A stretch of 64,000 nt of DNA from Octopus sinensis. Its lineage: Eukaryota. The stretch covers positions 7,687,360-7,751,359 of the forward strand of contig NC_043019.1 of the NCBI RefSeq assembly GCF_006345805.1. Direction: 5' to 3'. Below are positions 3,621-58,312 of the stretch, in pieces. Below the pieces are notes generated by a model that ran no database searches, had not been told where the DNA came from, and saw nothing but the letters and a program-made list of their open reading frames with translations. Made by a program: the position numbers and the translations under genes. Each line of letters starts with the position of its first letter. The first letter of the stretch is position 1.

Positions 3621-4885
3621 GCATTGAAATTTTTAAAGGATCTCTCATTACCTCAAGTTTGCTTTATCTCTCTCTTTCTCTCTCTCTCTCACACACACAC
3701 ACAGTCCGTGGGTAAGGACTATTAGTGTTCTAGCTAATTCGATCCATGGATTTGCCTGCTCGTGCTATTCAAATTGAAAGCGAGTGAACGCCCACGCATT
3801 CGTGTAACGTGAATGTAGTTCTCGGCAAAATTCCTCGTGACACCGAATGTGGCAAGGCAGGCGCATTGGATTATATGCACAGCTCATTTTTAATTACCTG
3901 AGTACACTGGAAAAACGTGGAATAAAATATCTTGCTCAAGAACAGAAAGTACCACCGAATAACGAACCCTCGATGATACGATTGCAAGCCGAATATTGTA
4001 AATATTGAGCTACGCGCCTTTACATATGCGCACACACATGGTCACACATGCACACATGCAGTCACACACACGCACAGGCACACATGCATACTCGATAATG
4101 GAAGGAGGATTGTGTGAATGTGGAAAAGGGGAGAATAAGTATTTGTTGAACTGGAAAGTTGAAAGAGGTCAAAAGAAAGCCTGATAGAATGTATGTTAAA
4201 TGTCTACATCCTACAAGCATTATATGTTGTTATATTTTCTGAAATCTATGTAAGTGTTGACGAAAGTGTGCGCTTGTGTGCATCACGATGTTTTAGACAA
4301 GGAATCTCAATCTAAGTGCGAACATGAAAATGATTTCGTTTGATAATTTAATTTGTGCAGCTAATGATTTTCGTGTCACCACGCAGGATTCCATTTAATT
4401 TACGTTTCACACTCAAGTGACGTTCATCGCATTAAAAACCAAATTGAAATGAGTTGAAGACGATGTCAGTATAATATGGACATTGTGTTGAAAGGTAAAT
4501 TCCATGCACCTGCTTATGTCTTTTATCTTGTACTGGTTTCAGTCATTAAAGTGGGGCCCTGCTGGAGCACCGCCGTGAAGAATTTTAGTCGATCAAATCG
4601 ATCCAGTAATTATATTACGGATTAAAAGCCAGATATTGGCTCCATTGGTCCCTTTTCTCGAACATCTTGGTTACAAGGTATAGGTAAGCACAGGAAAACC
4701 GCTTGTCAAGCGGTATGCGTGTGTGTGAGGGTGAAACACAGACTCACACACAAATGTGAGTTCGGAGACTTATATAAATATTTATATTCATACGTTTGTA
4801 TTTCCTGTTCATTACCGTAGGTCGGGAACAAAGAGAAATTGGCTCTGGACTTGCGCATTTCACGTAAGTTCAGATTAAATTCCTC

Positions 4886-4925
<40 letters not shown>

Positions 4926-5271
4926 GCACATCACATTTGTAATGTAGTGACACAAATGTCATACAATGTAAGAGAACATACCAGAGGGCATTACTTTAGA
5001 GAGCATGACGCTGAATGAATTTCAACTTTATATATATATATATATATATATTAATCAATTTAGGGTAGCAAAAAATTCAGTAAAAATTTATCGCTACCAG
5101 CGGCCTAGTGGAAAAGAGAAAATAGTCAAAGACTAAATATATATAAATATAACAATTTAGGAATGGCCTAAACAGGCCATTCGTCCACCAGAAAGAGCAG
5201 CCAGAACTCAAACCGCCAAGTAGTGCAATTCGGAAATAAGGTGAAAATTTAAAAACGTTTACCCTAATTCA

Positions 5272-5372
5272 TCTTTTATACGATGCATCGTTTCGGTGTT
5301 TTTAATGATAGACCAGCTTAATTAAATTAAATTAAGCTAGTCTACCATAGGTCACACTTCATCAGTAAAAGA
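5272..5372 (-). ncRNA. Type I hammerhead ribozyme, copy 1 of the 475-nt unit
   Basis: Reverse complement of the motif at 6215-6315. Predicted GUA cleavage between plus-strand 5279 and 5278. Confidence 0.85.
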
Positions 5373-5746
5373 AACCTTGGAGAGACGAATATACACGAGG
5401 CGACTGTATCAATGCCTCGGGAATATCTGTCTTAAAATTTTCAAGACCAACGCATTCGCGCCAAACTTATCGGCAGCAAATATAAACTGCCGATTCAATC
5501 TCAGAATTAGTCAGAAAATTATCAATTAATCAATTTAGGGTAGCAAAAAATTCAGTAAAAATTTATCGCTACCAGCGGCCTAGTGGAAAAGAGAAAATAG
5601 TCAAAGACTAAATATATATAAATATAACAATTTAGGAATGGCCTAAACAGGCCATTCGTCCACCAGAAAGAGCAGCCAGAACTCAAACCGCCAAGTAGTG
5701 CAATTCGGAAATAAGGTGAAAATTTAAAAACGTTTACCCTAATTCA

Positions 5747-5847
5747 TCTTTTATACGATGCATCGTTTCGGTGTTTTTAATGATAGACCAGCTTAATTAA
5801 ATTAAATTAAGCTAGTCTACCATAGGTCACACTTCATCAGTAAAAGA
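5747..5847 (-). ncRNA. Type I hammerhead ribozyme, copy 2
   Basis: Identical to copy 1. Predicted cleavage between 5754 and 5753. Confidence 0.85.
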
Positions 5848-6214
5848 AACCTTGGAGAGACGAATATACACGAGGCGACTGTATCAATGCCTCGGGAATA
5901 TCTGTCTTAAAATTTTCAAGACCAACGCATTCGCGCCAAACTTATCGGCAGCAAATATAAACTGCCGATTCAATCTCAGAATTAGTCAGAAAATTATCAA
6001 TTAATCAATTTAGGGTAGCAAAAAATTCAGTAAAAATTTATCGCTACCCTAAATTGATTAATTGATAATTTTCTGACTAATTCTGAGATTGAATCGGCAG
6101 TTTATATTTGCTGCCGATAAGTTTGGCGCGAATGCGTTGGTCTTGAAAATTTTAAGACAGATATTCCCGAGGCATTGATACAGTCGCCTCGTGTATATTC
6201 GTCTCTCCCAGGTT

Positions 6215-6315
6215 TCTTTTACTGATGAAGTGTGACCTATGGTAGACTAGCTTAATTTAATTTAATTAAGCTGGTCTATCATTAAAAACACCGAAACGAT
6301 GCATCGTATAAAAGA
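6215..6315 (+). ncRNA. Type I hammerhead ribozyme, copy 3
   Basis: Stem I TCTTTTA (6215-6221)/TAAAAGA (6309-6315); core CTGATGA 6222-6228; stem II GTGT/ACAC plus an 18-bp hairpin 6239-6256/6265-6282 with two G.U pairs; GAAA 6293-6296; palindromic stem III CGATGCATCG; GTA cleavage at 6308/6309. Confidence 0.85.
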
Positions 6316-6689
6316 TGAATTAGGGTAAACGTTTTTAAATTTTCACCTTATTTCCGAATTGCACTACTTGGCGGTTTGAGTTCTGGCTGCTCTTTCTGGT
6401 GGACGAATGGCCTGTTTAGGCCATCCCTAAATTGTTATATTTATATATATTTAGTCTTTGACTATTTTCTCTTTTCCACTAGGCCGCTGGTAGCGATAAA
6501 TTTTTACTGAATTTTTTGCTACCCTAAATTGATTAATTGATAATATTCTGACTGATTCTGAGATTGAATCGGCAGTTAATATTTCCTGCCGATAAGTTTG
6601 GCGCGAATGCGTTGGTCTTGAAAATTTTAAGACAGATATTCCCGAGGCATTGATACAGTCGCCTCGTGTATATTCGTCTCTCCCAGGTT

Positions 6690-6790
6690 TCTTTTACTGA
6701 TGAAGTGTGACCTATGGTAGACTAGCTTAATTTAATTTAATTAAGCTGGTCTATCATTAAAAACACCGAAACGATGCATCGTATAAAAGA
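6690..6790 (+). ncRNA. Type I hammerhead ribozyme, copy 4
   Basis: Same motif shifted by 475 bp. Predicted cleavage at 6783/6784. Confidence 0.85.
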
Positions 6791-6910
6791 TGAATTAGGG
6801 TAAACGTTTTTAAATTTTCACCTTATTTCCGAATAGCACTACTTGGCGGTTTGAGTTCTGGCTGCTCTTTCTGGTGGACGAATGGCCTGTTTAGGCCATT
6901 CCTAAATTGT

Positions 6911-6959
<49 letters not shown>

Positions 6960-6989
6960 ATATATATATATATAGAAATAGAGAGAGAG

Positions 6990-7275
6990 AGGCGCAGAAA
7001 TGGCAGTGTGATAAGCAGTTTCCTTGCCTACCACATTGATCTGGGTTCAGTCCCACTGCATGGCACCTTGGTCGAGTGTCTGTGTGTTTCCTCCCTAACA
7101 TCTCTCGACAAGTGATGTTGGTGTATTTACATCTCCGTAACGAAGTGCTTCGGCAAAAGAGACCGATTGAATAAGTACTAGGCTTACAAAAAATAAGTCC
7201 TGCGGTCCATTTGTTCGAATGAAGGTGGTGCTCTAGCAAGGCCGCAGTCAAATGGCTAACACAAATAAAAGAATA
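6990..7275 (+). mobile_element. tRNA-derived SINE (family 1, diverged)
   Basis: Colinear with 7466-7854. Other family-1 pieces lie near 4530-4720, 24585-24740, 25950-26135, 34050-34400, 37290-37450, 39895-40040, 43590-43770 and 53310-53430. Confidence 0.75.
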
Positions 7276-7420
7276 CATACATCATATGCAATGACATATT
7301 ATGGCCATCTATCTGCCTCTCTATATATCTGTATATGTATCTATCTGTCTGTCTGTCTGTCTATCTACATTAACTAAATATCGGTGTTTTTATCCATAGA
7401 TCTGTATATACATCGCCCTC

Positions 7421-7465
<45 letters not shown>

Positions 7466-7466
<1 letters not shown>

Positions 7467-7599
7467 GGCGCAGCAGTGGCCGTGTGGTAAGTAGCTTGCT
7501 AACCAACCGCATGGTTCCGGGTTCAGTCCCACTGCGTGGCACCTTGGGCAAGTGTCTTCTGCTATAGCCCCGGGCCGACCATTTGGTAGACAGAAACTG

Positions 7600-7630
<31 letters not shown>

Positions 7631-7854
7631 GTGTTTGTGTGTCTGTGTTTGTCCCCCTAGCATTGCTTGACAACCGATGCTGGTGTGTTTACGTCCCCGT
7701 CACTTAGCGGTTCGGCAAAAGAGACCGATAGAATAAGTACTTGGTTTACAAAAGAATAAGTCCCGGGGTCGATTTGCTCGACTAAAGGCGGTGCTCCAGC
7801 ATGGCCGCAGTAAAATGACTGAAAGAAGTAAAAGAGTAAAAGAGTAAAAGAGTA
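7466..7854 (+). mobile_element. tRNA-derived SINE (family 1)
   Basis: Head AGGCGCAG..GTGGC.GTGTGGTAAG, B-box-like GGTTCAGTCCC, 3' GGCGGTGCTCCAGCATGGCCGCAGT and (AAAAGAGT)n tail. Confidence 0.85.
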
Positions 7855-8459
7855 TATATGTATATATATATATATGTATGTATATATTTATGTATATATA
7901 TATATATGTATGTATATATTTATATATATGTATATATGTATGCATGTATTACACGCCAACTTAGTGCTTAGGCACATATATTCAATATAGCAGATGATAT
8001 AACACAGAGGCAAAATCAGTAACAACTCCATCAAGACTTAGAGCCCCGCCAACCCAAGAACACGAGCAACATATCAAACACAACAAGCAGTACCACAACA
8101 AGAACAGCATGAACAAACAAAAATAAATATGTAATACCAATTATTTACCTGACTTCAGTAAATATTCTATAGTCTAGAACTTTTGTATAGACAGCTTTTA
8201 GCATTATTGCAGTTTTTGAAATAAAACACAAATATAAAATACGAAAGTAATCAGAAGCCAGGAAAGAAGAAAAGAGAAAAAGGTAAACATGGAGAATGAT
8301 GAACAGAAGTCATTACAATTCTCGAAAGAAATTCCTCTGGGAAATCGAGAGATTGTTTCGAAAATATATTTTCGCTGGGTTTGTTATATATTTTCAATTT
8401 AATTATTTTTCTACTCTGTGTGTAAAGATACATATATATATACATCTATTATGGATGTA

Positions 8460-8475
8460 TGTATATATGTGTATT

Positions 8476-8508
<33 letters not shown>

Positions 8509-8731
8509 TATATATATATTATATATATATATATATATACACATATATGTGTGTGTGTGTGTGTGTATACATACACACTAACACATAAATATACCTCCAT
8601 GCCTCTAGACAATTCTGTGTATATGTATATGTGTGGGTGTATATATGTATATATATATATATATATACATATATGTATACATATGCATGTATATATATGT
8701 ATATATATTTATATACATATATATATGTATA

Positions 8732-8778
<47 letters not shown>

Positions 8779-8911
8779 AATATATATATATATATGCATA
8801 TATGTATAAATATATATATGCATATATATATATATAATATATATATATACATATAATATATATGTGTCCATCTATATATTTATGTATATATATATATATG
8901 TATATATATAT
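8460..8911. repeat. (TA)n-rich microsatellite (one of >30 such tracts)
   Basis: Direct reading. Confidence 0.95.
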
Positions 8912-8968
8912 AAGTAGAAAACAAAATGGAGGTAAGAAAGGTAATTATTGTTTAATTGGTCAATTTCG

Positions 8969-13855: not shown

Positions 13856-14862
13856 TTTCAATATATTTTCTGATTCTACGATGAAGGAAAGTTTCATAAT
13901 TTCGTGCTTAAACATACTTTATATATATATATACGAACTCTCTCATGCACCAAATGGCAATTGCTAAAAAGCATTCGTGAAGTAAAATTATGTAGCAACA
14001 CCAAATGGCGGTGCCCCAGCATGGCCACTGCTCGTGAGCTGAAAGTAGATAAAATAAAATAACAAATATTTAAAAAATAAGGCAAGTTGGTGTGTGACTC
14101 AATACAAAACAAAACCGTAGTACTTTCAAACGATCTGCAGGTCTAATGTCAATAAAGACGGAATGCAAACACGCTTTATCCCGAGGTAAACCTCCTAAAA
14201 TTTCCTTGCTTTTCTTTGAATAATTATACAGATACAGTTTGGTTTGTATTGAGTCTTTTCAACGTAAACAAACTAGCGCCAGTGCTAAATACCAAACTTG
14301 GAATTTACCTGAAATACTTTGAAGTTTAATGCAATGCATTATGCCTATATATTACTATACATTACTTTCCCCACGAGACATTTTGTGATTATATATATAT
14401 GATACGCAATACAATACTTACGTATGTGGAGAACATTAATACATAATAAAGCAACAAAAAAAGTTTTGTCACGACATTATGGCGTAGAAACGAACGAGTC
14501 GAAGAAAGAAAAACGATCGTGCTTTACAGAAAGAAATGCATTTGATAATTTGATACCATTCCATACACTCGGATATTGCTTATATATATATATATATATA
14601 TATTAAATAATGAGGGTAGAAATTGATATTAATCGATTAAAACGAGTGGTTTAGCATATTTAAGAAATCCGAAGATTAACAATTATATTACATACAGAAT
14701 TAAGAGGAATGACCACCAACGTGGACTCCTAAAACGCTAGATATAGACGTCAAACTGCCTAACCACGAAGAATGTGTTTGGAAGAAAAAAAATTCAGTAA
14801 AACGACAGATTGTAAAAATGAGCAAGGCAAATGAAAATATACGAAATGCAAAAAACTATTAC

Positions 14863-14928
14863 CTACATACCAATGGTTTCGCTTCTTAATATTTACGCAT
14901 GTAACTATCTGCAGGCTCATCAGCGTAG
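14863..14928 (-). ncRNA. Type I hammerhead ribozyme (third family)
   Basis: Minus strand: CTACG-CTGATGA-GC...GC-GAAA-CCATTGG-TA|TGTAG. Stem I has 5 bp including G.U, the core is intact, and stem II has only 2 clear bp. Confidence 0.6.
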
Positions 14929-21329: not shown

Positions 21330-22430
21330 TGGTGCTAACAAGAATGCTCTTAATATTGGGTCACAGCGAAAAGGGACCCTAAGGTTGTGCCTGATGAAAA
21401 CGCCTCCCTGAACTAGTGAACTGTTTATCTATGAACCTACGGAATGTCCTAACTACAGACATTTTTACGTTGAGAGAAGAGGTGCGGGATGCAACCAAAA
21501 GATATTTCTGTGGCGCTTCCTTCTACGGATGTTGGGGTCCGGTATATAGGAGATACGGTCTCTAAAACGGCTAGAAGTCACGGCCTCGTTATAGTAAGGG
21601 GTTGTTGCATCAGAAATCTCTTGGCTTGAGGAAAGTTTCGTGATCCTCTTATTAACATCCTTCACCAGGTTTGGAACACCATGGGTTGCTGACAAGAAGC
21701 TCTGTCGATGTACGTTAACTTCTCACTTGACTTGCGGTGGGGCCGGCAATTACCGGAGCCCAAGCTGAACGTGACGTCTAAGAATTTCGCAGTGGTGAGG
21801 TTGGCTTCAATGGTGATTTTTAATCCCACGGAGGCAAGTGTGCTAATTAGATCTTTCCTAAGCTTTTCTAGTGTGTGATCGTTTGCGCCTCAAGAGATTG
21901 CCGAGGCGCCATATCTGTAGAGACCAAAGAAACCAGAGGGGAACTCTTTCTTAAGGATTTCAAGGATATATAACCCGATGAGGTTGCATAGGTCAGTGCT
22001 GTCGTATTCCCCCATTGTTACATCAAAAGAGATCAAGGGATCGGATTGCTTGACCCAGGTCGAAACTTTATTGAACGAGACTATTTTCCTGGCGTGCAAA
22101 ATGACACCTCTATCCCTGTCACTAATGCCACTCATACCCGTTGCGAGGGTAAGAGGGTAAGAGCCTTGACCAGAAACTCTTTAGATATATACGGGAAAAA
22201 ATGTCAAACTGGGCTAATCTTACTCTACCTCTTCCCTTGTTGTTAAACCATGCAGTCACCTCGTTGGTGCCACGAAACAGGGAAATGTCAGCGGTTCTCT
22301 GTACGTCGTTATTGGTTTTTCTCAATTATACGCTTGCTCGCCAGACCCAACTCGGATTTGGCTCGGTTAATCAGGCGGCAGTTAACGTTTCAGGCAAAGT
22401 TCTGTTAAATGATCTTTGATGGTATTCATA
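21330..22430 (-). mobile_element. Penelope-like element reverse transcriptase, decayed
   Basis: Across frameshifts: TIKDH, CRLINRAKSELGLASKRIIEK, AWFNN..AQFDI, FDVTMGEYDSTDLCNLIGLYIL, GLYRYG (YRDDG lost), GLKITIEANL..FLDVTF, RRRKRHRNIFW. These motifs are typical of GIY-YIG PLE RTs. Confidence 0.85.
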
Positions 22431-22438: not shown

Positions 22439-22530
<92 letters not shown>

Positions 22531-24751: not shown

Positions 24752-24790
<39 letters not shown>

Positions 24791-24793
<3 letters not shown>

Positions 24794-25720
24794 CAATTTT
24801 AAACTTCTGAGACAGAAGCAGTAACAGCGCTAAATCGTAAATATGGCAATCCCAAAGAGGATGATGCAACTGTTATTTTTAGCCCCAAGAGGACATCTTC
24901 TCCAGTTGGTCAACAGCAGACCGTCTGTGACCGATTAGTATTTTGGAGGAGAAATCATCGTTCTCATCTCCAGCCTTACTTGATACACACAGACCTGGGT
25001 GTCTGAGTAGTAACCCATCCTCGTCATCTGTTAATCATCAGCTTTCTCTTTATTACAGACACAAGGCCTGAATACAGAGGGGACATACACAAACATATGA
25101 AAGAATGAATTATAATGAATACGAGACGATTTTCTCGGTCCCGCCCCGAGACGAAACTGCGATTGCTTTTTTACAATTAAACGTTCTTACAGTCTTTTCT
25201 TTTTTTTCTTTTTAGCTCATTCTTTTTCTTAGTCTTTTACGATAAATTTTTTCCTTTTTTCTTTAAACTTTTTAACAGTCTATTTTTCTCATTTTTTTTT
25301 TAATATGAAAGTACAAATTTTACTTACTTATTTTTAAATGTTCATAAAGTGTTTCAAATTTTCCAATTCCACTAACGGTGGGAGCCCGTCAAACTCGACT
25401 TCAACCCCCAGAGGGTCTATGAAAAGTCCGTACATCTCTCTTAGTTTAAAAAATCTCTCTTTATCTATGACTATTCCGTTTGTGTATTCCTGGTATTCTC
25501 CTGGCGGCAGCTTTATTCTTATTACCGATTTATATTAAACAATCGTTTTTTTCTATTTCTTTACTTTTGGAATACGTGACCAAATGCCGCTTTTATCTCT
25601 TCCTTTTCACTCCTGCTTGCTTCGGCTCCCGTTCTGATCTGTTCGGGCGTGCAGAAACAGCGTAACCAATTTTATGAACGCTTCTTTTCTCTCCCTGTTG
25701 TAATGCGAAGCATCCCCTCG
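24791..25720 (-). mobile_element. Second copy of the same HHR-bearing family
   Basis: 24880-25040 resembles 38360-38520 and 25045-25560 resembles 38770-39300; (TA)n on both flanks. Confidence 0.55.
24986..25030 (-). ncRNA. Degenerate copy of the 38464-38508 hammerhead
   Basis: Minus strand: ...CGAGGA-TGGGT-TACT-ACTCA-GACA-CCCAGG-TC|TGTGTG. Core mutated; flanks homologous to 38370-38520. Confidence 0.45.
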
Positions 25721-34400: not shown

Positions 34401-34500
34401 NNNNNNNNNNNNNNNNNNNNNNNNNNNNNNNNNNNNNNNNNNNNNNNNNNNNNNNNNNNNNNNNNNNNNNNNNNNNNNNNNNNNNNNNNNNNNNNNNNNN
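34401..34500. other. Assembly gap (100 N)
   Basis: Run of N. Confidence 1.
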
Positions 34501-37230: not shown

Positions 37231-38015
37231 GTATGCATTAAATGTTTGTAAATTCCACCCAAGTATAATTGTCATTATATACACACACTCATATGCGACG
37301 AGCTTCTTTCAGCTTCCGTCTACCAAATTCTCTCATAAGTCTTTGGTCTGCCCGAAGCGTTATTAGAAGACAATTGAGACAATATGCCGTGCAGTGGGAC
37401 TGAACCCGTAACCATCTGACTTGGATGCATGTTTCTGATCACAGAACAACATCGTTCTTCTCATTATTATTATTATTTATATATAAACGTCATCATCATT
37501 ATTGTTATAAGATTAGGATAATGATTGTCAATATTAATTATGTATATTAACTGGTATACATCGTTGATAATTATGTTTTATAACTTCAAGTTGTTCTGAG
37601 TAATTAGGTGCTTCTCAAAATTCATTATTGTTATTGAAACAATTGTTGAAACCCTATAGGAAAATTAAATGTGTCAACAACACTTTTGTATTTGTTATGT
37701 CTGTTCGCATTTGTGAGTGCTATTTGTGGACACACGCAGGCATATACACAGGCAGACACACACTCAAGCTCATGATTTAATACACACACGTGTATACACA
37801 TGCATAGGCATCTACATCTTAATATATTTGTGCTTAAGGCTGCTGCCAGCTGGCAGAATCATTAGCAGACCAGGCGAAATGCTTTGCGGTGTTTCGTCTG
37901 ACTACACGTTCTGAGTTCAAATTCCGTCGAGGTCGACTTCACTTTTCATCCCTTCAGGTTCGATAAATGAAGTACCCGGAACCGTGTATGTATGCATGAA
38001 TATATATATATATAT

Positions 38016-38250: not shown

Positions 38251-39781
38251 AGCAATAATAAATCTCTGAGCGAGGTATAAATAGTAGCTGCATGACATCG
38301 TGAACTATATTTGCCACTTAAATGTGGCTAACCCCTAATGGTGGATGTTACTGTAGCTTGTAGATCCAGGATGTCTCCTCCTCCAGCTGGCTATAGACAC
38401 ACTTTCTGTGCCCTATCAGTATCTGCAAAGGGAAGGCATTCTTCCCGTTTTCAACCCATGATACACACGGACTCGAGTTTCTGGGTATTGACCCATCATC
38501 AGCGTGTGGCAATCACTGATTATTTCTTTATTATAGGCACGTAGCCTAAAGATAGAATGGACATTACAAATACAGGATCTTTTCCGTATTTGCGCGTTAC
38601 TCTTGATTTGCATACCCAACAGTGAGTAGCAACAAAACTGTTTTCAAAAATTCAACAAAAACAGTTTTCAATAACAAAATGTCGATAACTCACAATCTCA
38701 TAACCGCCAACTCAGAAAAACCAACATTCAACACCAACGACGAACATTCTCTAACGAGTGACAATCACAGTTTCTCTCTTTATGATAGGCAAAAGGCCTG
38801 AATTCAGAGGGGTCATACACAAACATGGGGGAACAAAAAAGCGTACTAAAGAATGAATTACAATGAATTAAATTATAATGAATATGAGGCGGTTTTCTCG
38901 GTCCCGCCCCGAGACGAAACCGCGATTGCTTTTTTACAATTAAACGTTCTTACAGTGTTTTTTCATCTTTTCTTATTTAATTTGTTTTTTTTGTATAGTT
39001 TTTTTTTCTTTTTTCTTTATACATTTTAACAGTCTATTTTCCTCTTTTTTTATGAAGTACAAATTTTACTTACCTATTTTTAAATGTTCATAAAGGGTTT
39101 CAAATCTTCTTATTCCGCGACCGGTGGGAGTTCGTCAAACTCGACTTCGACCCACAGCGACCAGCGGGTCTATGAAAAGTTCCTGCATCTCTCTTTAACT
39201 ATGACTATTCTTTTAGTGTGTTCCGGGTATTTTCCTGGCGGCAGCTTTACTCTTATTACCGATTTAAATTTTACAATCGTTTTCTCTACTTCTTTACTTT
39301 TTCTTCTTAATTATTATCTCTTTTAACTGCATCGTCTCAACAGACAGGCTCTTGTCTGCTGCCTGCACGTAACTTGCTTTTTGCATACCCAACCGTGGGT
39401 AGCAACAAAACAATTTTCAAAAATTCAACAACCTCAATACTTTCCACAATAACAATTTTCAATAACATATTTCTGTAACTCACAATCTCATAACCGCCAA
39501 CTCAGAAAAAACAACACTCAACTCCGACGACGCACGTGACAATCACCGTTGTCGATGAGAAGTAGGCCCTCCTTTGCAAACATATATCCTTTTGTTCCAG
39601 TGACGATATCAAAAAAAGGGTAAACTAGCAATAATAAATCTCTCAGCGAGTTATAAACAATAGCTGCACGACATCGTGAAATATATTTGCCACTTAAACG
39701 TGGCTAACCCCTCCTAGGGCTACAAGCTACAGTAGCATCCACCATTAGTTGTTAGCCACATTTAAGTGGCAAATATAGTTC

Positions 39782-39783
<2 letters not shown>
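38251..39783 (-). mobile_element. Non-autonomous PLE-like element: 3' pLTR with HHR, body with internal direct repeats and ORF remnant, 5' direct plus inverted pLTR fragments
   Basis: 38251-38335 repeated directly at 39627-39711; 38300-38363 repeated inverted at 39720-39783; internal direct repeats ~38590-38775 and ~39365-39550; (TA)n on both flanks. Confidence 0.6.
38464..38508 (-). ncRNA. Intact minimal type I hammerhead ribozyme
   Basis: Minus strand: CACACG-CTGATGA-TGGGT-CAAT-ACCCA-GAAA-CTCGAG-TC|CGTGTG. 6-bp stem I, 5-bp stem II, palindromic stem III, GUC triplet. Cleavage between 38470 and 38469. Confidence 0.85.
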
Positions 39784-39822
<39 letters not shown>

Positions 39823-40458
39823 TATATATAAAGAGAGAGGGAGAGAGAGAGAGAGAGAGAATATTATATCGTAATTATATATATTCTCCAATTTGAAGCA
39901 ACTCCATTCACACCCAAATGGCTTGGCCGGCCGAAGCATCTAACAGAAGTCACTAAATCAAGATGCCACGCAGTGGGACTGAACCTCGTACCATACGCCC
40001 GCGAAGCAAGCTTCTTACCACACAGCCTGCACCTATGTGTTAATACATACATTACCGAGATAATAACTGTCTTCTACACACTTTTGTACGTTTAATTGAA
40101 CCGTCAACGTGACAACAAGTTGATTGGTGTCTATATTGAAGCATAACGCATGTGCATATCCGATCACTTTCTCCATACAATTGGACAGTCTCTCTCAGCA
40201 TAAGGTTATGAAGATGTAGCATATTTGATTCTCAGATTCTCTCCCACGTCTCATTTGGAGTCGGTCCTAATTGTCACCAATCAATTATGTACGATCTCTT
40301 GTAGCAGAAATGAATTCAAGGAGTAAAGCACAAACACATGCAGTGATTTACACACAAAACGAACACTCTCACACACCTACAGAAATACACCGAAAAGAAT
40401 ACTCACACAAACATGCCAACCCCTTTATCAGTAGTTCTTGCTTGTGCATAATATCTAC

Positions 40459-57329: not shown

Positions 57330-57416
57330 GCAACAACTGTTTTCTACTAGCTCCACCACCACCACCACCATTACTACTACTACTACTAATACTACTACTG
57401 CTGCTGTTGTTGTTGA

Positions 57417-57449
<33 letters not shown>

Positions 57450-57623
57450 CACTACTACTACTACTACTCCTACTATTACTACTACTACTGCTACTAATCC
57501 TACTGCTGCTGCCACTACTAGTACTACTACCGCTACTACTACTACTACTAATAATAATAATACTGCTACTACCACTTCTACTGCTGCTGCTGCTACTACT
57601 ACTACTACTACTACCACTACTAC

Positions 57624-57663
<40 letters not shown>

Positions 57664-57972
57664 GTGGCTGCTGCTGCTTCTGTATGTTTTCACCTGCAAG
57701 CATAACTACAAATATAACATTTAGCAGATGCAATAATAATATTACAAATACAAACACTAAAGATAGCAATAACACCAACACCGCCAGTGCCACCCCCACT
57801 GTCACTACAGCCATAATCACCACCACCACCACCGCCACCAACGCCAACAACAAAATCAATAATAATGCTAAACATAACATTAATGATGATGATGATGATG
57901 ATGATGATGATAATAATAATAATAATAATAATGATAATAATAATAATGATGATGATGATGATAATAATAATA

Positions 57973-58021
<49 letters not shown>

Positions 58022-58080
58022 TGATGAGGATGATGATGATAATAATAATAATAATAATAATAATGATGATGATGATGATG

Positions 58081-58169
<89 letters not shown>

Positions 58170-58244
58170 AATAATAATAATAATAATACTGCTACTACTA
58201 CTACTACTACTACACTACTACTACTACTAATAATAATAATAATA

Positions 58245-58310
<66 letters not shown>
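57330..58310. repeat. ~1-kb compound trinucleotide array (ACT/AAC/GAT/AAT); similar blocks at 31200-31430, 34501-34825, 42718-42900 and 44950-45400
   Basis: Direct reading; explains the poly-T/N/D/H ORFs in the track. Confidence 0.95.

Positions 58311-58312
<2 letters not shown>

What the first reader, a model, noticed from the sequence alone, without database searches (positions are those of the whole stretch)
5051..6915. Tandem plus fold-back array of a 475-nt hammerhead-ribozyme unit: candidate cephalopod retrozyme / circRNA factory
Seen: a non-coding 475-bp unit (starts 5051, 5526, 6001), then its reverse complement from 6043 to ~6915, with (TA)n at both ends. Each unit has a type I HHR: 7-bp stem I, CTGATGA, extended stem II, GAAA, palindromic stem III CGATGCATCG and a GUA site. 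The 18-bp stem II has two non-Watson-Crick positions that are both G.U on the HHR strand, which supports selection on RNA structure. The unit has further hairpins: GAATGGCCT/AGGCCATTC, ATCGGCAG/CTGCCGAT, CGAGGC/GCCTCG and GTCTTGAAA/TTTTAAGAC. Established: animal non-LTR retrozymes are tandem HHR repeats of a few hundred nt whose transcripts self-cleave to monomers that circularise, and palindromic helix III allows dimeric hammerheads; PLE pLTRs carry similar HHRs. Inference: read-through would release exact 475-nt monomers (6309-6783 on +, 5753-5279 on -). I cannot tell whether this family is already annotated.
Basis: partly seen in the sequence, partly recalled or inferred. Interest (0 to 1): 0.92.

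Follow-up and report, generated by a model that had tools for sequence, protein, structure and literature searches.

The report
Hammerhead-ribozyme tandem repeat, retrozyme-like insertion
A 475-base non-coding repeat with a hammerhead self-cleaving RNA motif sits as two head-to-head tandem arrays inside a (TA)n microsatellite, and it looks like one more member of the known animal "retrozyme" / Penelope-dependent retroelement class rather than a new kind of element.

Summary
There is a 475-bp tandem (5050-6048, 2.1 copies, 100% identical). Its reverse complement follows (arms 5134-6027 / 6035-6928, 99% complementary), with (TA)n on both sides. Each unit has a complete type I hammerhead core (CUGAUGA / GAAAC / GUA), a 7-bp helix I, a long helix II and a 12-nt palindromic helix III.

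Neither Rfam nor my own covariance model detects the motif.

Folding predicts a double hammerhead between neighbouring units. My descriptor puts a chance match at about 4e-6 per unit.

Both arms have their sense 3' ends facing outwards. Each ends exactly 14 nt after a hairpin-CUAAAUUG module, against (TA)n. The centre is a 6-nt microhomology (GCTACC) in the unit's own hairpin. This is the tandem-plus-inverted, microsatellite-targeted architecture published for Penelope-like elements. A second, unrelated hammerhead element in the window (38251-39786) has the same layout.

Best reading: one retrozyme-like insertion made by twin-primed reverse transcription. "CircRNA factory" is untested. Cephalopod origin, copy number and expression could not be checked. 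This is a new member of a known kind, of moderate interest.

The parts
5029..5050 (.). Left (TA)n flank, part of the microsatellite target
   Evidence: Sequence; junction alignment
5051..6048 (-). Left arm. Sense (hammerhead) strand is minus. It covers monomer positions p181-475, 1-475 and 1-229, about 2.1 units, all identical to each other.
   Evidence: TRF period 475, 100% matches; register table; junctions
6014..6048 (.). The unit's own hairpin (GGTAGC 6014-6019, 23-nt loop, GCTACC 6043-6048), which forms the centre of the fold-back. GCTACC is the 6-nt microhomology shared by both arms.
   Evidence: the left-arm unit is native up to 6048 and the right-arm unit is native from 6043
6043..6915 (+). 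Right arm. Sense strand is plus. It covers monomer positions p210-475, 1-475 and 1-132, about 1.84 units. Successive units differ by about 1.5%.
6916..6974 (.). Right (TA)n flank
   Evidence: TRF
6215..6315 (+). Hammerhead copy 1 on +. Helix I 6215-6221 / 6309-6315, CUGAUGA 6222-6228, helix II 6229-6292, GAAA 6293-6296, helix III 6296-6307, A17 at 6308. Predicted cut is between 6308 and 6309.
   Evidence: active fold is only +1.9 kcal/mol above the MFE
6690..6790 (+). Hammerhead copy 2 on +. Predicted cut is between 6783 and 6784.
   Evidence: In a 6203-6805 transcript its helix III pairs with that of copy 1.
5747..5847 (-). Hammerhead copy on the minus strand. C3 is at 5840 and A17 at 5754. 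Predicted cut is between 5754 and 5753.
5272..5372 (-). Hammerhead copy on the minus strand. C3 is at 5365 and A17 at 5279. Predicted cut is between 5279 and 5278.
6309..6783 (+). The only complete cleavage-to-cleavage monomer of the right arm (475 nt)
   Evidence: circular MFE -138 kcal/mol, z -7.2, 64% paired
5279..5753 (-). The only complete cleavage-to-cleavage monomer of the left arm (475 nt)
   Evidence: circular MFE -142 kcal/mol, z -7.8
6880..6915 (+). 3'-end module 1: hairpin GAAUGGCCU-GUUU-AGGCCAUUC (p97-118), then CUAAAUUG, then UUAUAU, then (TA)n
   Evidence: The arm ends 14 nt after the last paired base.
5050..5098 (-). 3'-end module 2: hairpin GGUAGCGA...UUGCUACC (p181-215), then CUAAAUUG, then AUUAAU, then (TA)n
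   Evidence: This arm also ends 14 nt after the last paired base.

Best explanation
The locus is one insertion of a 475-nt non-autonomous, non-coding retroelement that carries a type I hammerhead ribozyme. In the literature's terms it is an animal 'non-LTR retrozyme', a presumed passenger of Penelope-like element (PLE) reverse transcriptase/endonuclease.

Shown by the sequence:
- The unit has a full hammerhead core.
- Each arm runs uninterrupted across the predicted cleavage/ligation site twice.
- The hammerhead-sense 3' ends of both arms point outwards and abut (TA)n.
- Each 3' end lies 14 nt after a hairpin followed by CUAAAUUG and an AU-rich hexamer.
- The two 5' ends meet in the centre at a 6-nt microhomology, which is one half of a hairpin stem of the unit.

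Inferred:
1. Somewhere in the genome, arrays of this family are transcribed as multimers.
2. Neighbouring hammerheads pair through the 12-nt palindromic helix III into a double hammerhead and cut after GUA. This releases 475-nt monomers that a tRNA-type ligase circularises.
3. A PLE-type endonuclease breaks a (TA)n tract.
4. Both exposed 3'-OH ends anneal to the AU-rich tail next to one of the two hairpin-CUAAAUUG modules. Each primes reverse transcription on a circular or multimeric template (twin priming), giving more-than-unit cDNAs from both sides.
5. The two cDNAs have the same polarity, so they can anneal only at a self-complementary segment. They did so at the unit's hairpin stem (GGTAGC/GCTACC), which produced the head-to-head fold-back.

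This particular locus is more likely a product of that cycle than a major source of circles.
For: Repeat anatomy.

Hammerhead:
- It has the CUGAUGA/GAAAC/GUA centre and all three helices.
- The active fold is only 1.9 kcal/mol above the MFE, and helix I continues beyond a UG bulge.
- The helix III hairpin is worth only -2.0 kcal/mol, against -20.7 for the 12-bp inter-unit duplex.
- The unconstrained MFE of 6203-6805 already pairs the two helix III segments. Bimolecular cofolding gives a textbook double hammerhead at -94.1, against 2 x -40.6 kcal/mol.
- A chance match is about 4e-6 per unit.

Precedent for a mismatch at the base of helix II:
- The validated axolotl Ax353 hammerhead has U.U there, a palindromic helix III and a GUA site. 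It cleaves weakly as a monomer and well as a dimer.
- PLE hammerheads typically have a long helix II, an extra nucleotide after A9 and a palindromic helix III. They also occur as pairs on opposite strands 100-700 bp apart. Here the two central hammerheads lie on opposite strands 382 bp apart.

Class features: 36% GC, no ORF above 50 aa, and a sense circle that is 64% paired with z -7.2/-7.8, against -5.2 for the antisense.

PLE architecture: partial tandems plus an inverted 5'-truncated copy at the 5' end, with (TA)n as a preferred target, are published PLE hallmarks. Retrozymes have been proposed to be PLE-dependent.

Independent recurrence: element X (38251-39786) has a hammerhead detected by a model of validated retrozyme hammerheads (30.7 bits, E 8e-7). 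It has the same head-to-head, 3'-ends-outward, (TA)n-flanked layout.

Shared 3' ends...AAATTGTTATAT| and ...AAATTGATTAAT| in the unit...TTATTGCTT| in X, and ...AAATTGCCA| in Y, each followed by (AT)n.
Against: - No Rfam hammerhead hit at the gathering score or at E <= 10.
- My model R1 gives no full alignment of the array motif. The likely reason is the 64-nt helix II and the A.C at 10.1/11.1, but I could not show that this is the reason.
- G10.1-C11.1, normally highly conserved, is absent in the simple register.
- No relatives were found, so there is no covariation test.
- There is only one locus in 64 kb, and genomic copy number is unknown.
- The window has no PLE RT/GIY-YIG ORF.
- There are no expression data.
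- The reported 30-40 bp PLE 'tail' is not evident.
- The right arm's units differ by about 1.5% while the left arm's are identical, with 5 of 6 private substitutions in one copy. A single clean event does not predict this.
- A DNA-level fold-back at a short inverted repeat would give a similar centre.
Confidence: 0.7

Rival explanations
1. It is an ordinary satellite or minisatellite, possibly descended from a retrozyme, that was rearranged at the DNA level. A replication template switch or fold-back at the unit's short inverted repeat (GGTAGC...GCTACC) duplicated an existing tandem array in inverted orientation. The hammerhead is then a relic with no current role.
For: The centre lies exactly at a short inverted repeat with 6-nt microhomology, which is what fold-back inversions use. 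The right arm ends in the unit's own TA-rich tract, where a second microhomology switch to the flanking (TA)n is conceivable. The two arms are unevenly diverged. Li et al. discuss local amplification of retrozyme arrays by satellite-type mechanisms.
Against: - The right arm is not a copy of the homogeneous left arm. It has an arm-specific base at p376 and five private changes in copy B.
- Both outer ends sit at the same offset from two paralogous hairpin-CUAAAUUG modules, which a random DNA breakpoint does not predict.
- The unrelated element X shows the same architecture.
Confidence: 0.13
2. The hammerhead-like motif is a chance match in an AT-rich tandem repeat, and the repeat has nothing to do with ribozymes.
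For: Rfam and my covariance model do not detect it. Position 10.1/11.1 is A.C. At my relaxed descriptor about 20 chance matches are expected in a 2.5-Gb genome. No covariation is available.
Against: - The expectation is about 4e-6 for one 475-nt unit and about 5e-4 for the window.
- All 15 core positions used in the field are present.
- The motif strand agrees with the sense strand implied by the insertion geometry.
- Helix III is a 12-nt palindrome, and the double hammerhead is the predicted ground state.
- Unit size, GC content and self-pairing match the retrozyme class.
Confidence: 0.08
3. The palindrome is an assembly or long-read artefact (a fold-back chimeric read), and the real locus is a simple tandem array.
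For: Near-perfect palindromes are a known artefact class. Craig et al. note that PLE tandem/inverted structures often cause assembly problems. The left-arm copies are suspiciously identical.
Against: - The structure is embedded in contiguous unique sequence, and the only N gap is 28 kb away.
- The arms are unequal (998 nt against 873 nt) and end at different unit phases.
- Both ends are bounded by (TA)n and different flanks.
- The arms differ at specific positions.
- The centre is a microhomology junction in a hairpin rather than an arbitrary point.
Confidence: 0.06
4. The fold-back acts mainly as a hairpin-RNA locus, which is compatible with a retroelement origin. A transcript through both arms forms about 0.9 kb of near-perfect dsRNA. 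That dsRNA feeds small-RNA silencing of the family or is edited by ADAR.
For: The arms are 894 nt and 99% complementary. Rfam's sub-threshold hits are all long-hairpin miRNA precursor models centred on 6031, which reflects the hairpin.
Against: There is no evidence of transcription or small RNAs. All miRNA-model hits are far below their gathering scores. Nothing in the sequence is specific to this function.
Confidence: 0.1

Closest known systems
Animal non-LTR retrozymes (Cervera & de la Pena 2020, PMC7229834), for example the mussel Mytilus galloprovincialis 350-390-nt repeats and the axolotl Rtz_353 with HHR_Amex2
   Same: - Tandem non-coding repeats of a few hundred nt, each with one type I hammerhead.
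- Low GC and a highly self-paired predicted circle.
- The hammerhead centre is CUGANGA/GAAAY/RUH.
- Like Ax353, it has a non-pair at the base of helix II followed by G-C, a palindromic helix III, a GUA site and a predicted need to act as a dimer.
   Different: - The unit is somewhat longer (475 nt).
- Helix II is 64 nt (4 bp, a 5x5 loop, 19 bp), against about 4 bp plus a loop.
- Helix III has 4 bp plus a tetraloop.
- There is no sequence similarity to the published clones.
- It is not detected by a model built from those clones.
- Expression and circles were not shown here.
- The fold-back arrangement is not described for retrozymes in the papers I read.
Penelope-like elements: pLTR hammerheads and insertion architecture (Cervera & de la Pena 2014, PMC4209133; Craig et al. 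2021, PMC8557442)
   Same: - Partial tandems plus an inverted 5'-truncated copy joined at the 5' end.
- Insertion into microsatellites, (TA)n in particular.
- Hammerheads with a long helix II, an irregular nucleotide right after A9 and a palindromic helix III.
- Paired hammerheads on opposite strands a few hundred bp apart.
   Different: - It has no RT/GIY-YIG ORF, and the whole element is 475 nt.
- Helix I (7 bp and more) and helix III are longer than in the 'minimal' PLE hammerheads.
- G10.1-C11.1 is not formed in the simple register.
- No 30-40 bp tail is recognised.
Twin priming of LINE-1 (Ostertag & Kazazian 2001; cited from my own knowledge, not read here)
   Same: Both 3'-OH ends of a staggered break prime cDNA synthesis on one RNA. 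This gives two segments in opposite orientation, with sense 3' ends outwards and a microhomology junction in the middle.
   Different: In L1 the two segments copy different parts of a linear mRNA, and one end carries poly(A). Here both arms copy the same repeated or circular template for more than one unit, and the target is (TA)n.
Newt satellite 2 and other dimeric hammerheads (discussed in PMC7229834 and PMC4209133)
   Same: A weak helix III in the monomer and an extended helix III in tandem transcripts, so cleavage is favoured in multimers.
   Different: Newt helix III is 1-2 bp. Here it is 4 bp in cis and 12 bp in trans. The sequences are unrelated.
Foldback (FB) DNA transposons with inverted arms made of tandem subrepeats (cited from my own knowledge)
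   Same: Long inverted arms composed of tandem repeats.
   Different: The outer termini are not symmetrical, since the arms end at different unit phases (p229 and p132). There is no recognisable TSD and no transposase. The arms carry a strand-specific ribozyme motif oriented outwards.

Membership tests
Hammerhead ribozyme, type I | Conserved catalytic centre CUGANGA ... GAAAY ... RUH | tested here: met
   CUGAUGA, GAAAC and GUA are present in all four copies. The criterion is quoted from the supplement of PMC7229834.
Hammerhead ribozyme, type I | Three helices around the core, with helix I open and helices II and III closed | tested here: met
   Helix I has 7 bp, then a bulge, 4 bp and 3 bp. 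Helix II has 4 bp plus 19 bp. Helix III has 4 bp plus UGCA. The constrained active fold is +1.9 kcal/mol above the MFE.
Hammerhead ribozyme, type I | G10.1-C11.1 pair closing helix II | tested here: not met
   The simple register gives A10.1.C11.1 followed by G-C. An alternative register has an extra A after A9, G-C next to G12 and a bulged C. It is possible but unproven. The precedent is U.U in the active axolotl Ax353.
Hammerhead ribozyme, type I | Score at or above threshold with the Rfam covariance models (Hammerhead_1 and relatives) | tested here: not met
   No hammerhead hit at the gathering score over the whole window or at E <= 10 over 4900-7000. Rfam also missed the canonical-looking hammerhead at 38464-38508, so the test is insensitive to these variants.
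Hammerhead ribozyme, type I | Detection by a model of experimentally validated retrozyme hammerheads | tested here: not met
   Model R1 (coral, mussel, two axolotl) finds 38464-38508 at 30.7 bits. It gives no full alignment at 6190-6340, where the best score is 4.6 bits.
Hammerhead ribozyme, type I | Compensatory changes in the helices among relatives | not testable with these tools
   The four copies have identical hammerheads. No relatives were found in the window, the metagenome or viral collections, or the protein-indexed assemblies.
Hammerhead ribozyme, type I | Site-specific self-cleavage | not testable with these tools
   This needs in vitro transcription of monomer and dimer constructs.
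Animal non-LTR retrozyme | Tandem repeats of about 150-450 bp (51-972 bp in Li et al. 2026), each with a type I hammerhead | tested here: met
   The period is 475 with one motif per unit.
Animal non-LTR retrozyme | Low GC (below 50%), no LTR/PBS/PPT and no coding capacity | tested here: met
   GC is 36.4%. The longest ORF is 50 aa. The repeat structure is a plain tandem.
Animal non-LTR retrozyme | Predicted circular RNA is stable and highly self-paired | tested here: met
   The circular MFE is -138/-142 kcal/mol, 64% paired, with z -7.2/-7.8. The antisense gives z -5.2.
Animal non-LTR retrozyme | Many dispersed genomic copies or arrays | not testable with these tools
   There is only this locus in 64 kb, and no eukaryotic genome collection was available.
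Animal non-LTR retrozyme | Expressed as linear and circular monomer RNAs | not testable with these tools
   No transcriptome data were available.
Penelope-like element insertion (non-autonomous derivative) | Partial tandem plus an inverted 5'-truncated copy joined at the 5' end | tested here: met
   The arms are p181->229 (minus) and p210->132 (plus), with 5' ends at the centre and 3' ends outwards.
Penelope-like element insertion (non-autonomous derivative) | Microsatellite target, with (TA)n preferred by some clades | tested here: met
   (TA)n lies on both sides. The same holds for element X.
Penelope-like element insertion (non-autonomous derivative) | An autonomous partner with RT and GIY-YIG in the same genome that shares the 3' end | not testable with these tools
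Penelope-like element insertion (non-autonomous derivative) | A 30-40 bp 'tail' extension at one end | tested here: inconclusive
   The left arm runs 97 nt further into the unit than the right arm (p229 against p132). No separate 30-40 bp tail is seen.
Foldback DNA transposon / MITE | Symmetrical terminal inverted repeats at the outer ends and a target-site duplication | tested here: not met
   The outer ends are at different unit phases. Only a 9-nt internal motif is shared. A TSD cannot be read in (TA)n.
Viroid-like / deltavirus-like circular RNA replicon (cDNA copy) | Ribozymes in both polarities and/or an antigen ORF | tested here: not met
   The hammerhead is on one polarity only. No other ribozyme family appears on either strand at E <= 10. 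No ORF exceeds 50 aa.

The most novel reading that the evidence does not exclude
The locus is a clean 'fossil' of how retrozyme RNA is integrated. Both ends of a break in (TA)n primed reverse transcription at a specific 3'-entry module, consisting of a stem-loop, CUAAAUUG and an AU-rich hexamer, which is present twice per unit. The template had no free ends. The three identical units of the left arm would be a rolling-circle copy of one circular RNA. The two cDNAs were joined at the only place where same-polarity cDNAs can anneal, which is a hairpin stem. This would be the first sequence-level definition of an RT entry site and of twin-primed, circle-templated integration for animal retrozymes and PLE passengers.
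Probability: 0.25. Interest if true: 0.6.

Novelty: new member of a known kind. Interest (0 to 1): 0.36.

Why it matters
Retrozymes and their dependence on Penelope-like elements are established ideas, so another family is not a surprise. I found no paper in the searchable library that describes a cephalopod retrozyme, but I also could not verify that this window is from a cephalopod.

The locus adds an unusually legible insertion structure:
- two arms with 3' ends at paralogous hairpin-CUAAAUUG modules;
- a centre at a hairpin microhomology;
- a second, unrelated hammerhead element in the same window with the same layout.

Li et al. 2026 and Craig et al. 2021 state that the mobilisation mechanism and the origin of PLE tandem/inverted structures are still undefined. 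A genome-wide survey of this family's junctions could test twin priming and circle-templated reverse transcription directly.

The hammerhead variant (A.C at the base of helix II, a 64-nt helix II, a 12-nt palindromic helix III) is also a useful test case for how much deviation the motif tolerates.

Tried and rejected
- **Rfam.** The gathering-score search of the whole window gave nothing. E <= 10 on 4900-7000 gave only long-hairpin miRNA-model noise on the fold-back centre.
- **Own covariance model R1.** Built from four validated retrozyme hammerheads, it works as a positive control on 38464-38508 but cannot span the array's long helix II.
- **Search for relatives.**
  - blastn of the unit against the window found only TA-rich noise.
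  - nhmmer found nothing.
  - Exact look-up of the two longest unit ORFs in the assembly index found nothing.
  - Two metagenome scans and one viral scan with hammerhead patterns found nothing.
- **Organism identity.**
  - Protein searches with a SINE-derived ORF and an RT-like ORF gave no hits.
  - Pfam on ten ORFs gave no hits.
  - A literature search for a SINE string gave no hits.
  - The flank at 6990-7270 resembles, from my memory only, an abundant octopus SINE. This is not a test.
- **G.U versus A.C asymmetry as evidence for the RNA strand.** The counts are 9:6 overall and 4:0 in the strongest stems, which is too weak to lean on.
- **Possible old relative at 14.6-14.9 kb.** The Smith-Waterman score of 51 is matched by low-complexity segments elsewhere (top score 53). 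I therefore leave this homology as tentative.
- **tRNA / Pol III origin.** ARAGORN found nothing in 4000-8000.
- **Foldback DNA transposon, viroid-like or deltavirus-like replicon, and pLTR of an autonomous PLE.** All rejected. The period equals the whole 475-nt element and there is no ORF (see the membership table).
Full report

Yes. Tandem Repeats Finder reports a 475-bp period at 5050-6048 with 2.1 copies and 100% matches. The repeat finder reports inverted arms 5134-6027 / 6035-6928, 894 nt and 99% complementary. (TA)n tracts lie at 5029-5052 and 6911-6974. No other copy of the unit occurs in the 64-kb window. The only assembly gap is at 34401-34500. No ORF in the region exceeds 50 aa.

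**2. The hammerhead motif**

Four copies are present. Two are on the plus strand (C3 at 6222 and 6697; A17 at 6308 and 6783). Two are on the minus strand (C3 at 5840 and 5365; A17 at 5754 and 5279). Each copy reads as follows:

- helix I: UCUUUUA/UAAAAGA, 7 bp;
- core: CUGAUGA;
- helix II;
- GAAA;
- helix III: ACGA-UGCA-UCGU;
- cleavage site: A17, then the cut.

This meets the catalytic-centre rule used by the group that defined retrozymes, CUGANGA/GAAAY/RUH.

- The pair next to the core is A.C, not G-C. It is followed by GUGU/ACAC, a 5x5 internal loop and then a 19-bp stem with two G.U pairs.
- Helix I continues past a UG bulge for 4 bp and then 3 bp.
- The helix III segment is a 12-nt palindrome.

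Folding results:

- The active conformation costs only 1.9 kcal/mol more than the MFE in a 128-nt context.
- The helix III hairpin alone is worth -2.0 kcal/mol, against -20.7 for the duplex between two units.
- In a transcript covering 6203-6805, the unconstrained MFE already pairs the two helix III segments.
- Two 128-nt fragments cofold into a textbook double hammerhead, at -94.1 against 2 x -40.6 kcal/mol.

**3. Is the motif more than chance?**

My descriptor requires:

- at least 4 of the first 5 helix II pairs;
- helix III of at least 4 bp;
- H17 not G;
- helix I of at least 7 bp.

It finds only the four array copies in the window. In 200 Mb of Markov-1 sequence with the window's dinucleotide content it found 0 hits at that stringency and 2 at helix I >= 6. 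By extrapolation this is roughly 0.8 per 200 Mb. That corresponds to about 5e-4 per window and about 4e-6 per 475-nt unit on both strands, but about 20 per 2.5-Gb genome. The motif alone would therefore not be remarkable genome-wide. Its presence inside a tandem repeat of retrozyme size is.

Model-based tests fail:

- Rfam gives no hammerhead hit at the gathering score or at E <= 10.
- I built a covariance model (R1) from the four experimentally validated retrozyme hammerheads printed in the supplement of PMC7229834: coral, mussel and two from axolotl.
- R1 finds another site in the window, 38464-38508 (-), at 30.7 bits and E 8e-7.
- R1 cannot align the array motif. The 64-nt helix II and the A.C are the likely reasons, but I could not show this.
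- Rfam also misses 38464-38508, so its silence carries little weight for these variants.

A mismatch at the base of helix II has a tested precedent. Axolotl HHR_Amex2 (Ax353) has U.U there, then G-C, a palindromic helix III and a GUA site. It cleaves 22% in 1 h as a monomer and much better as a dimer. PLE hammerheads typically show a long helix II, an extra nucleotide after A9 and a palindromic helix III.

**4. Features of the unit as an RNA**

- GC content is 36.4%.
- As a circle, the hammerhead-sense strand folds to -138/-142 kcal/mol, 64% paired, with z -7.2/-7.8. The antisense gives -110/-109 with z -5.2.
Counting G.U against A.C positions in all local stems gives 9:6, and 4:0 in the four strongest stems.

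**5. Anatomy of the array**

I number the monomer from the nucleotide after the cut (p1 is the first nt after the cut, p475 is A17).

- The left arm, sense on minus, covers p181-475, 1-475 and 1-229.
- The right arm, sense on plus, covers p210-475, 1-475 and 1-132.

Four things follow directly from this:

- **(a)** Each arm crosses the cleavage/ligation site twice without interruption. The template was therefore an uncleaved multimer or a circle.
- **(b)** The sense 3' ends of both arms point outwards and abut (TA)n.
- **(c)** Both 3' ends lie at the same offset, 14 nt, after a hairpin followed by CUAAAUUG and an AU-rich hexamer. One is the hairpin p97-118 + CUAAAUUG + UUAUAU. The other is the hairpin p181-215 + CUAAAUUG + AUUAAU. 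The unit contains exactly these two copies of CCTAAATTG.
- **(d)** The 5' ends meet at GCTACC (6043-6048). This is a 6-nt stretch native to both arms, because it is one half of the stem of the unit's hairpin p181-215.

The arms are not equally diverged. The three left-arm copies are identical. Five of six private substitutions sit in right-arm copy B, and p376 is arm-specific.

**6. Comparison with published architecture**

Craig et al. 2021 describe PLE insertions as partial tandems, often with an inverted 5'-truncated copy adjacent at the 5' end. They report a strong bias for microsatellites and mark (TA)n as a preferred target. Cervera & de la Pena 2014 note paired PLE hammerheads on opposite strands 100-700 bp apart. 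Here the two central hammerheads are 382 bp apart on opposite strands. Cervera & de la Pena 2020 and Li et al. 2026 propose that animal retrozymes are mobilised by PLEs, possibly from circular templates.

The geometry matches twin priming, a model known for LINE-1, which I cite from my own knowledge. Both 3'-OH ends of a break prime cDNA synthesis inwards. The two cDNAs have the same polarity, so they can anneal only at a self-complementary segment. The centre lies at exactly such a segment.

**7. Independent support inside the window**

- **Element X (38251-39786).** It is unrelated in sequence to the 475-nt unit and carries the model-supported hammerhead. It lies between two (TA)n tracts. 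One arm (sense minus, 39712->38251) contains a partial tandem. A short inverted arm (sense plus, 39712->39786) is joined head-to-head.
- **Element Y (24765-25568).** It is a diverged relative of X. Its hammerhead core is mutated, and it also ends at (AT)n.
- **Shared 3' ends.** X ends ...TTATTGCTT|, Y ends ...AAATTGCCA|, and the unit ends ...AAATTGTTATAT| and ...AAATTGATTAAT|, each followed by (AT)n.
- **Possible relative at 14.6-14.9 kb.** A third hammerhead-like site at 14926-14865 (-) is followed 260 nt later by CTACCCTCATTATTTAAT|(TA)n. It may be an old relative of the unit, but the alignment score is not distinctive.

**8. Rival explanations**

- **DNA-level fold-back of a satellite.** This explains the centre. 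It does not explain the paralogous 3' ends, the arm-specific differences or the recurrence in X.
- **Chance motif.** This is unlikely on the numbers above, but it is not excluded in the absence of covariation or cleavage data.
- **Assembly artefact.** This is unlikely given the unequal arms, distinct flanks and arm-specific bases, but only raw reads can settle it.
- **Hairpin-RNA role for the fold-back.** This is compatible with everything and is untested.

**9. What could not be done**

- No eukaryotic genome or transcriptome was searchable. Copy number, covariation, expression and the autonomous partner remain open.
- The taxon is unverified.
- No paper in the searchable library describes a cephalopod retrozyme.

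**10. Verdict**

The locus is a real, well-described feature. It is best read as a new family of a known class, retrozyme-like passengers of Penelope-type machinery, caught as a single twin-primed insertion in (TA)n. The 'circRNA factory' label is not supported for this locus. Interest is moderate. It lies mainly in the legible junctions and in the deviant but plausibly dimer-active hammerhead.

Noticed in passing
window 38251-39786 (hammerhead at 38464-38508, minus strand): This is a second hammerhead-bearing element (X), unrelated in sequence to the 475-nt unit. Its canonical type I hammerhead reads CACACG-CUGAUGA-UGGGUCAAUACCCA-GAAA-CUCGAG-UC|CGUGUG. My model of validated retrozyme hammerheads scores it at 30.7 bits, E 8e-7, while Rfam misses it. 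The element lies between two (TA)n tracts. It has a partial tandem (39627-39712 matches 38251-38336 at 92%) and a short head-to-head inverted copy (39712-39786 against 38297-38371 at 91%).
   Followed up: partly
window 24765-25568: This is a diverged relative (Y) of element X, at 66-76% identity. Its hammerhead core is mutated (CGAGGA and GACAC in place of CUGAUGA and GAAAC). Its sense 3' end ...AAAATTGCCA abuts (AT)n at about 24766.
   Followed up: partly
window 14578-14926, minus strand: A hammerhead-like site, CGCUGAUGAGC-[32 nt]-GCGAAACCAUUGGUA|UGUAG, scores 9.4 bits with E 2.5, which is not significant, and it folds poorly. About 260 nt downstream the sequence ends CTACCCTCATTATTTAAT|(TA)n, which resembles the unit's GCTACCCTAAATTGATTAAT|(TA)n. 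It also shares a 16-nt exact match, TTTTACTGAATTTTTT, with the unit. It may be an old relative of the 475-nt family, but the homology is not statistically established.
   Followed up: partly
window 6990-7270; also about 37380-37443 and 39959-40022: These are copies of a SINE-like repeat containing GGGTTCAGTCCCACTGC, a tRNA B-box-like sequence. One copy lies directly right of the array's (TA)n. From memory it resembles an abundant octopus SINE. Protein and literature searches gave nothing to confirm this.
   Followed up: partly
window 21665-22180, minus strand: Two adjacent stop-separated reading frames show reverse-transcriptase-like strings (...FDVTMGEYD...GLYRYGA...LKITIE...FLDVTF...). Pfam and the large protein search gave no hits, so the nature of this fragment is unknown.
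   Followed up: partly
whole window: The window is extremely rich in microsatellites. It has many (TA)n tracts up to about 480 bp (for example 8428-8912), (TATC)n arrays at 22439, 40452, 41753 and 43336, and trinucleotide arrays at 57372-58312. Overall GC is 35.5%. There is one 100-N gap at 34401-34500.
   Followed up: no
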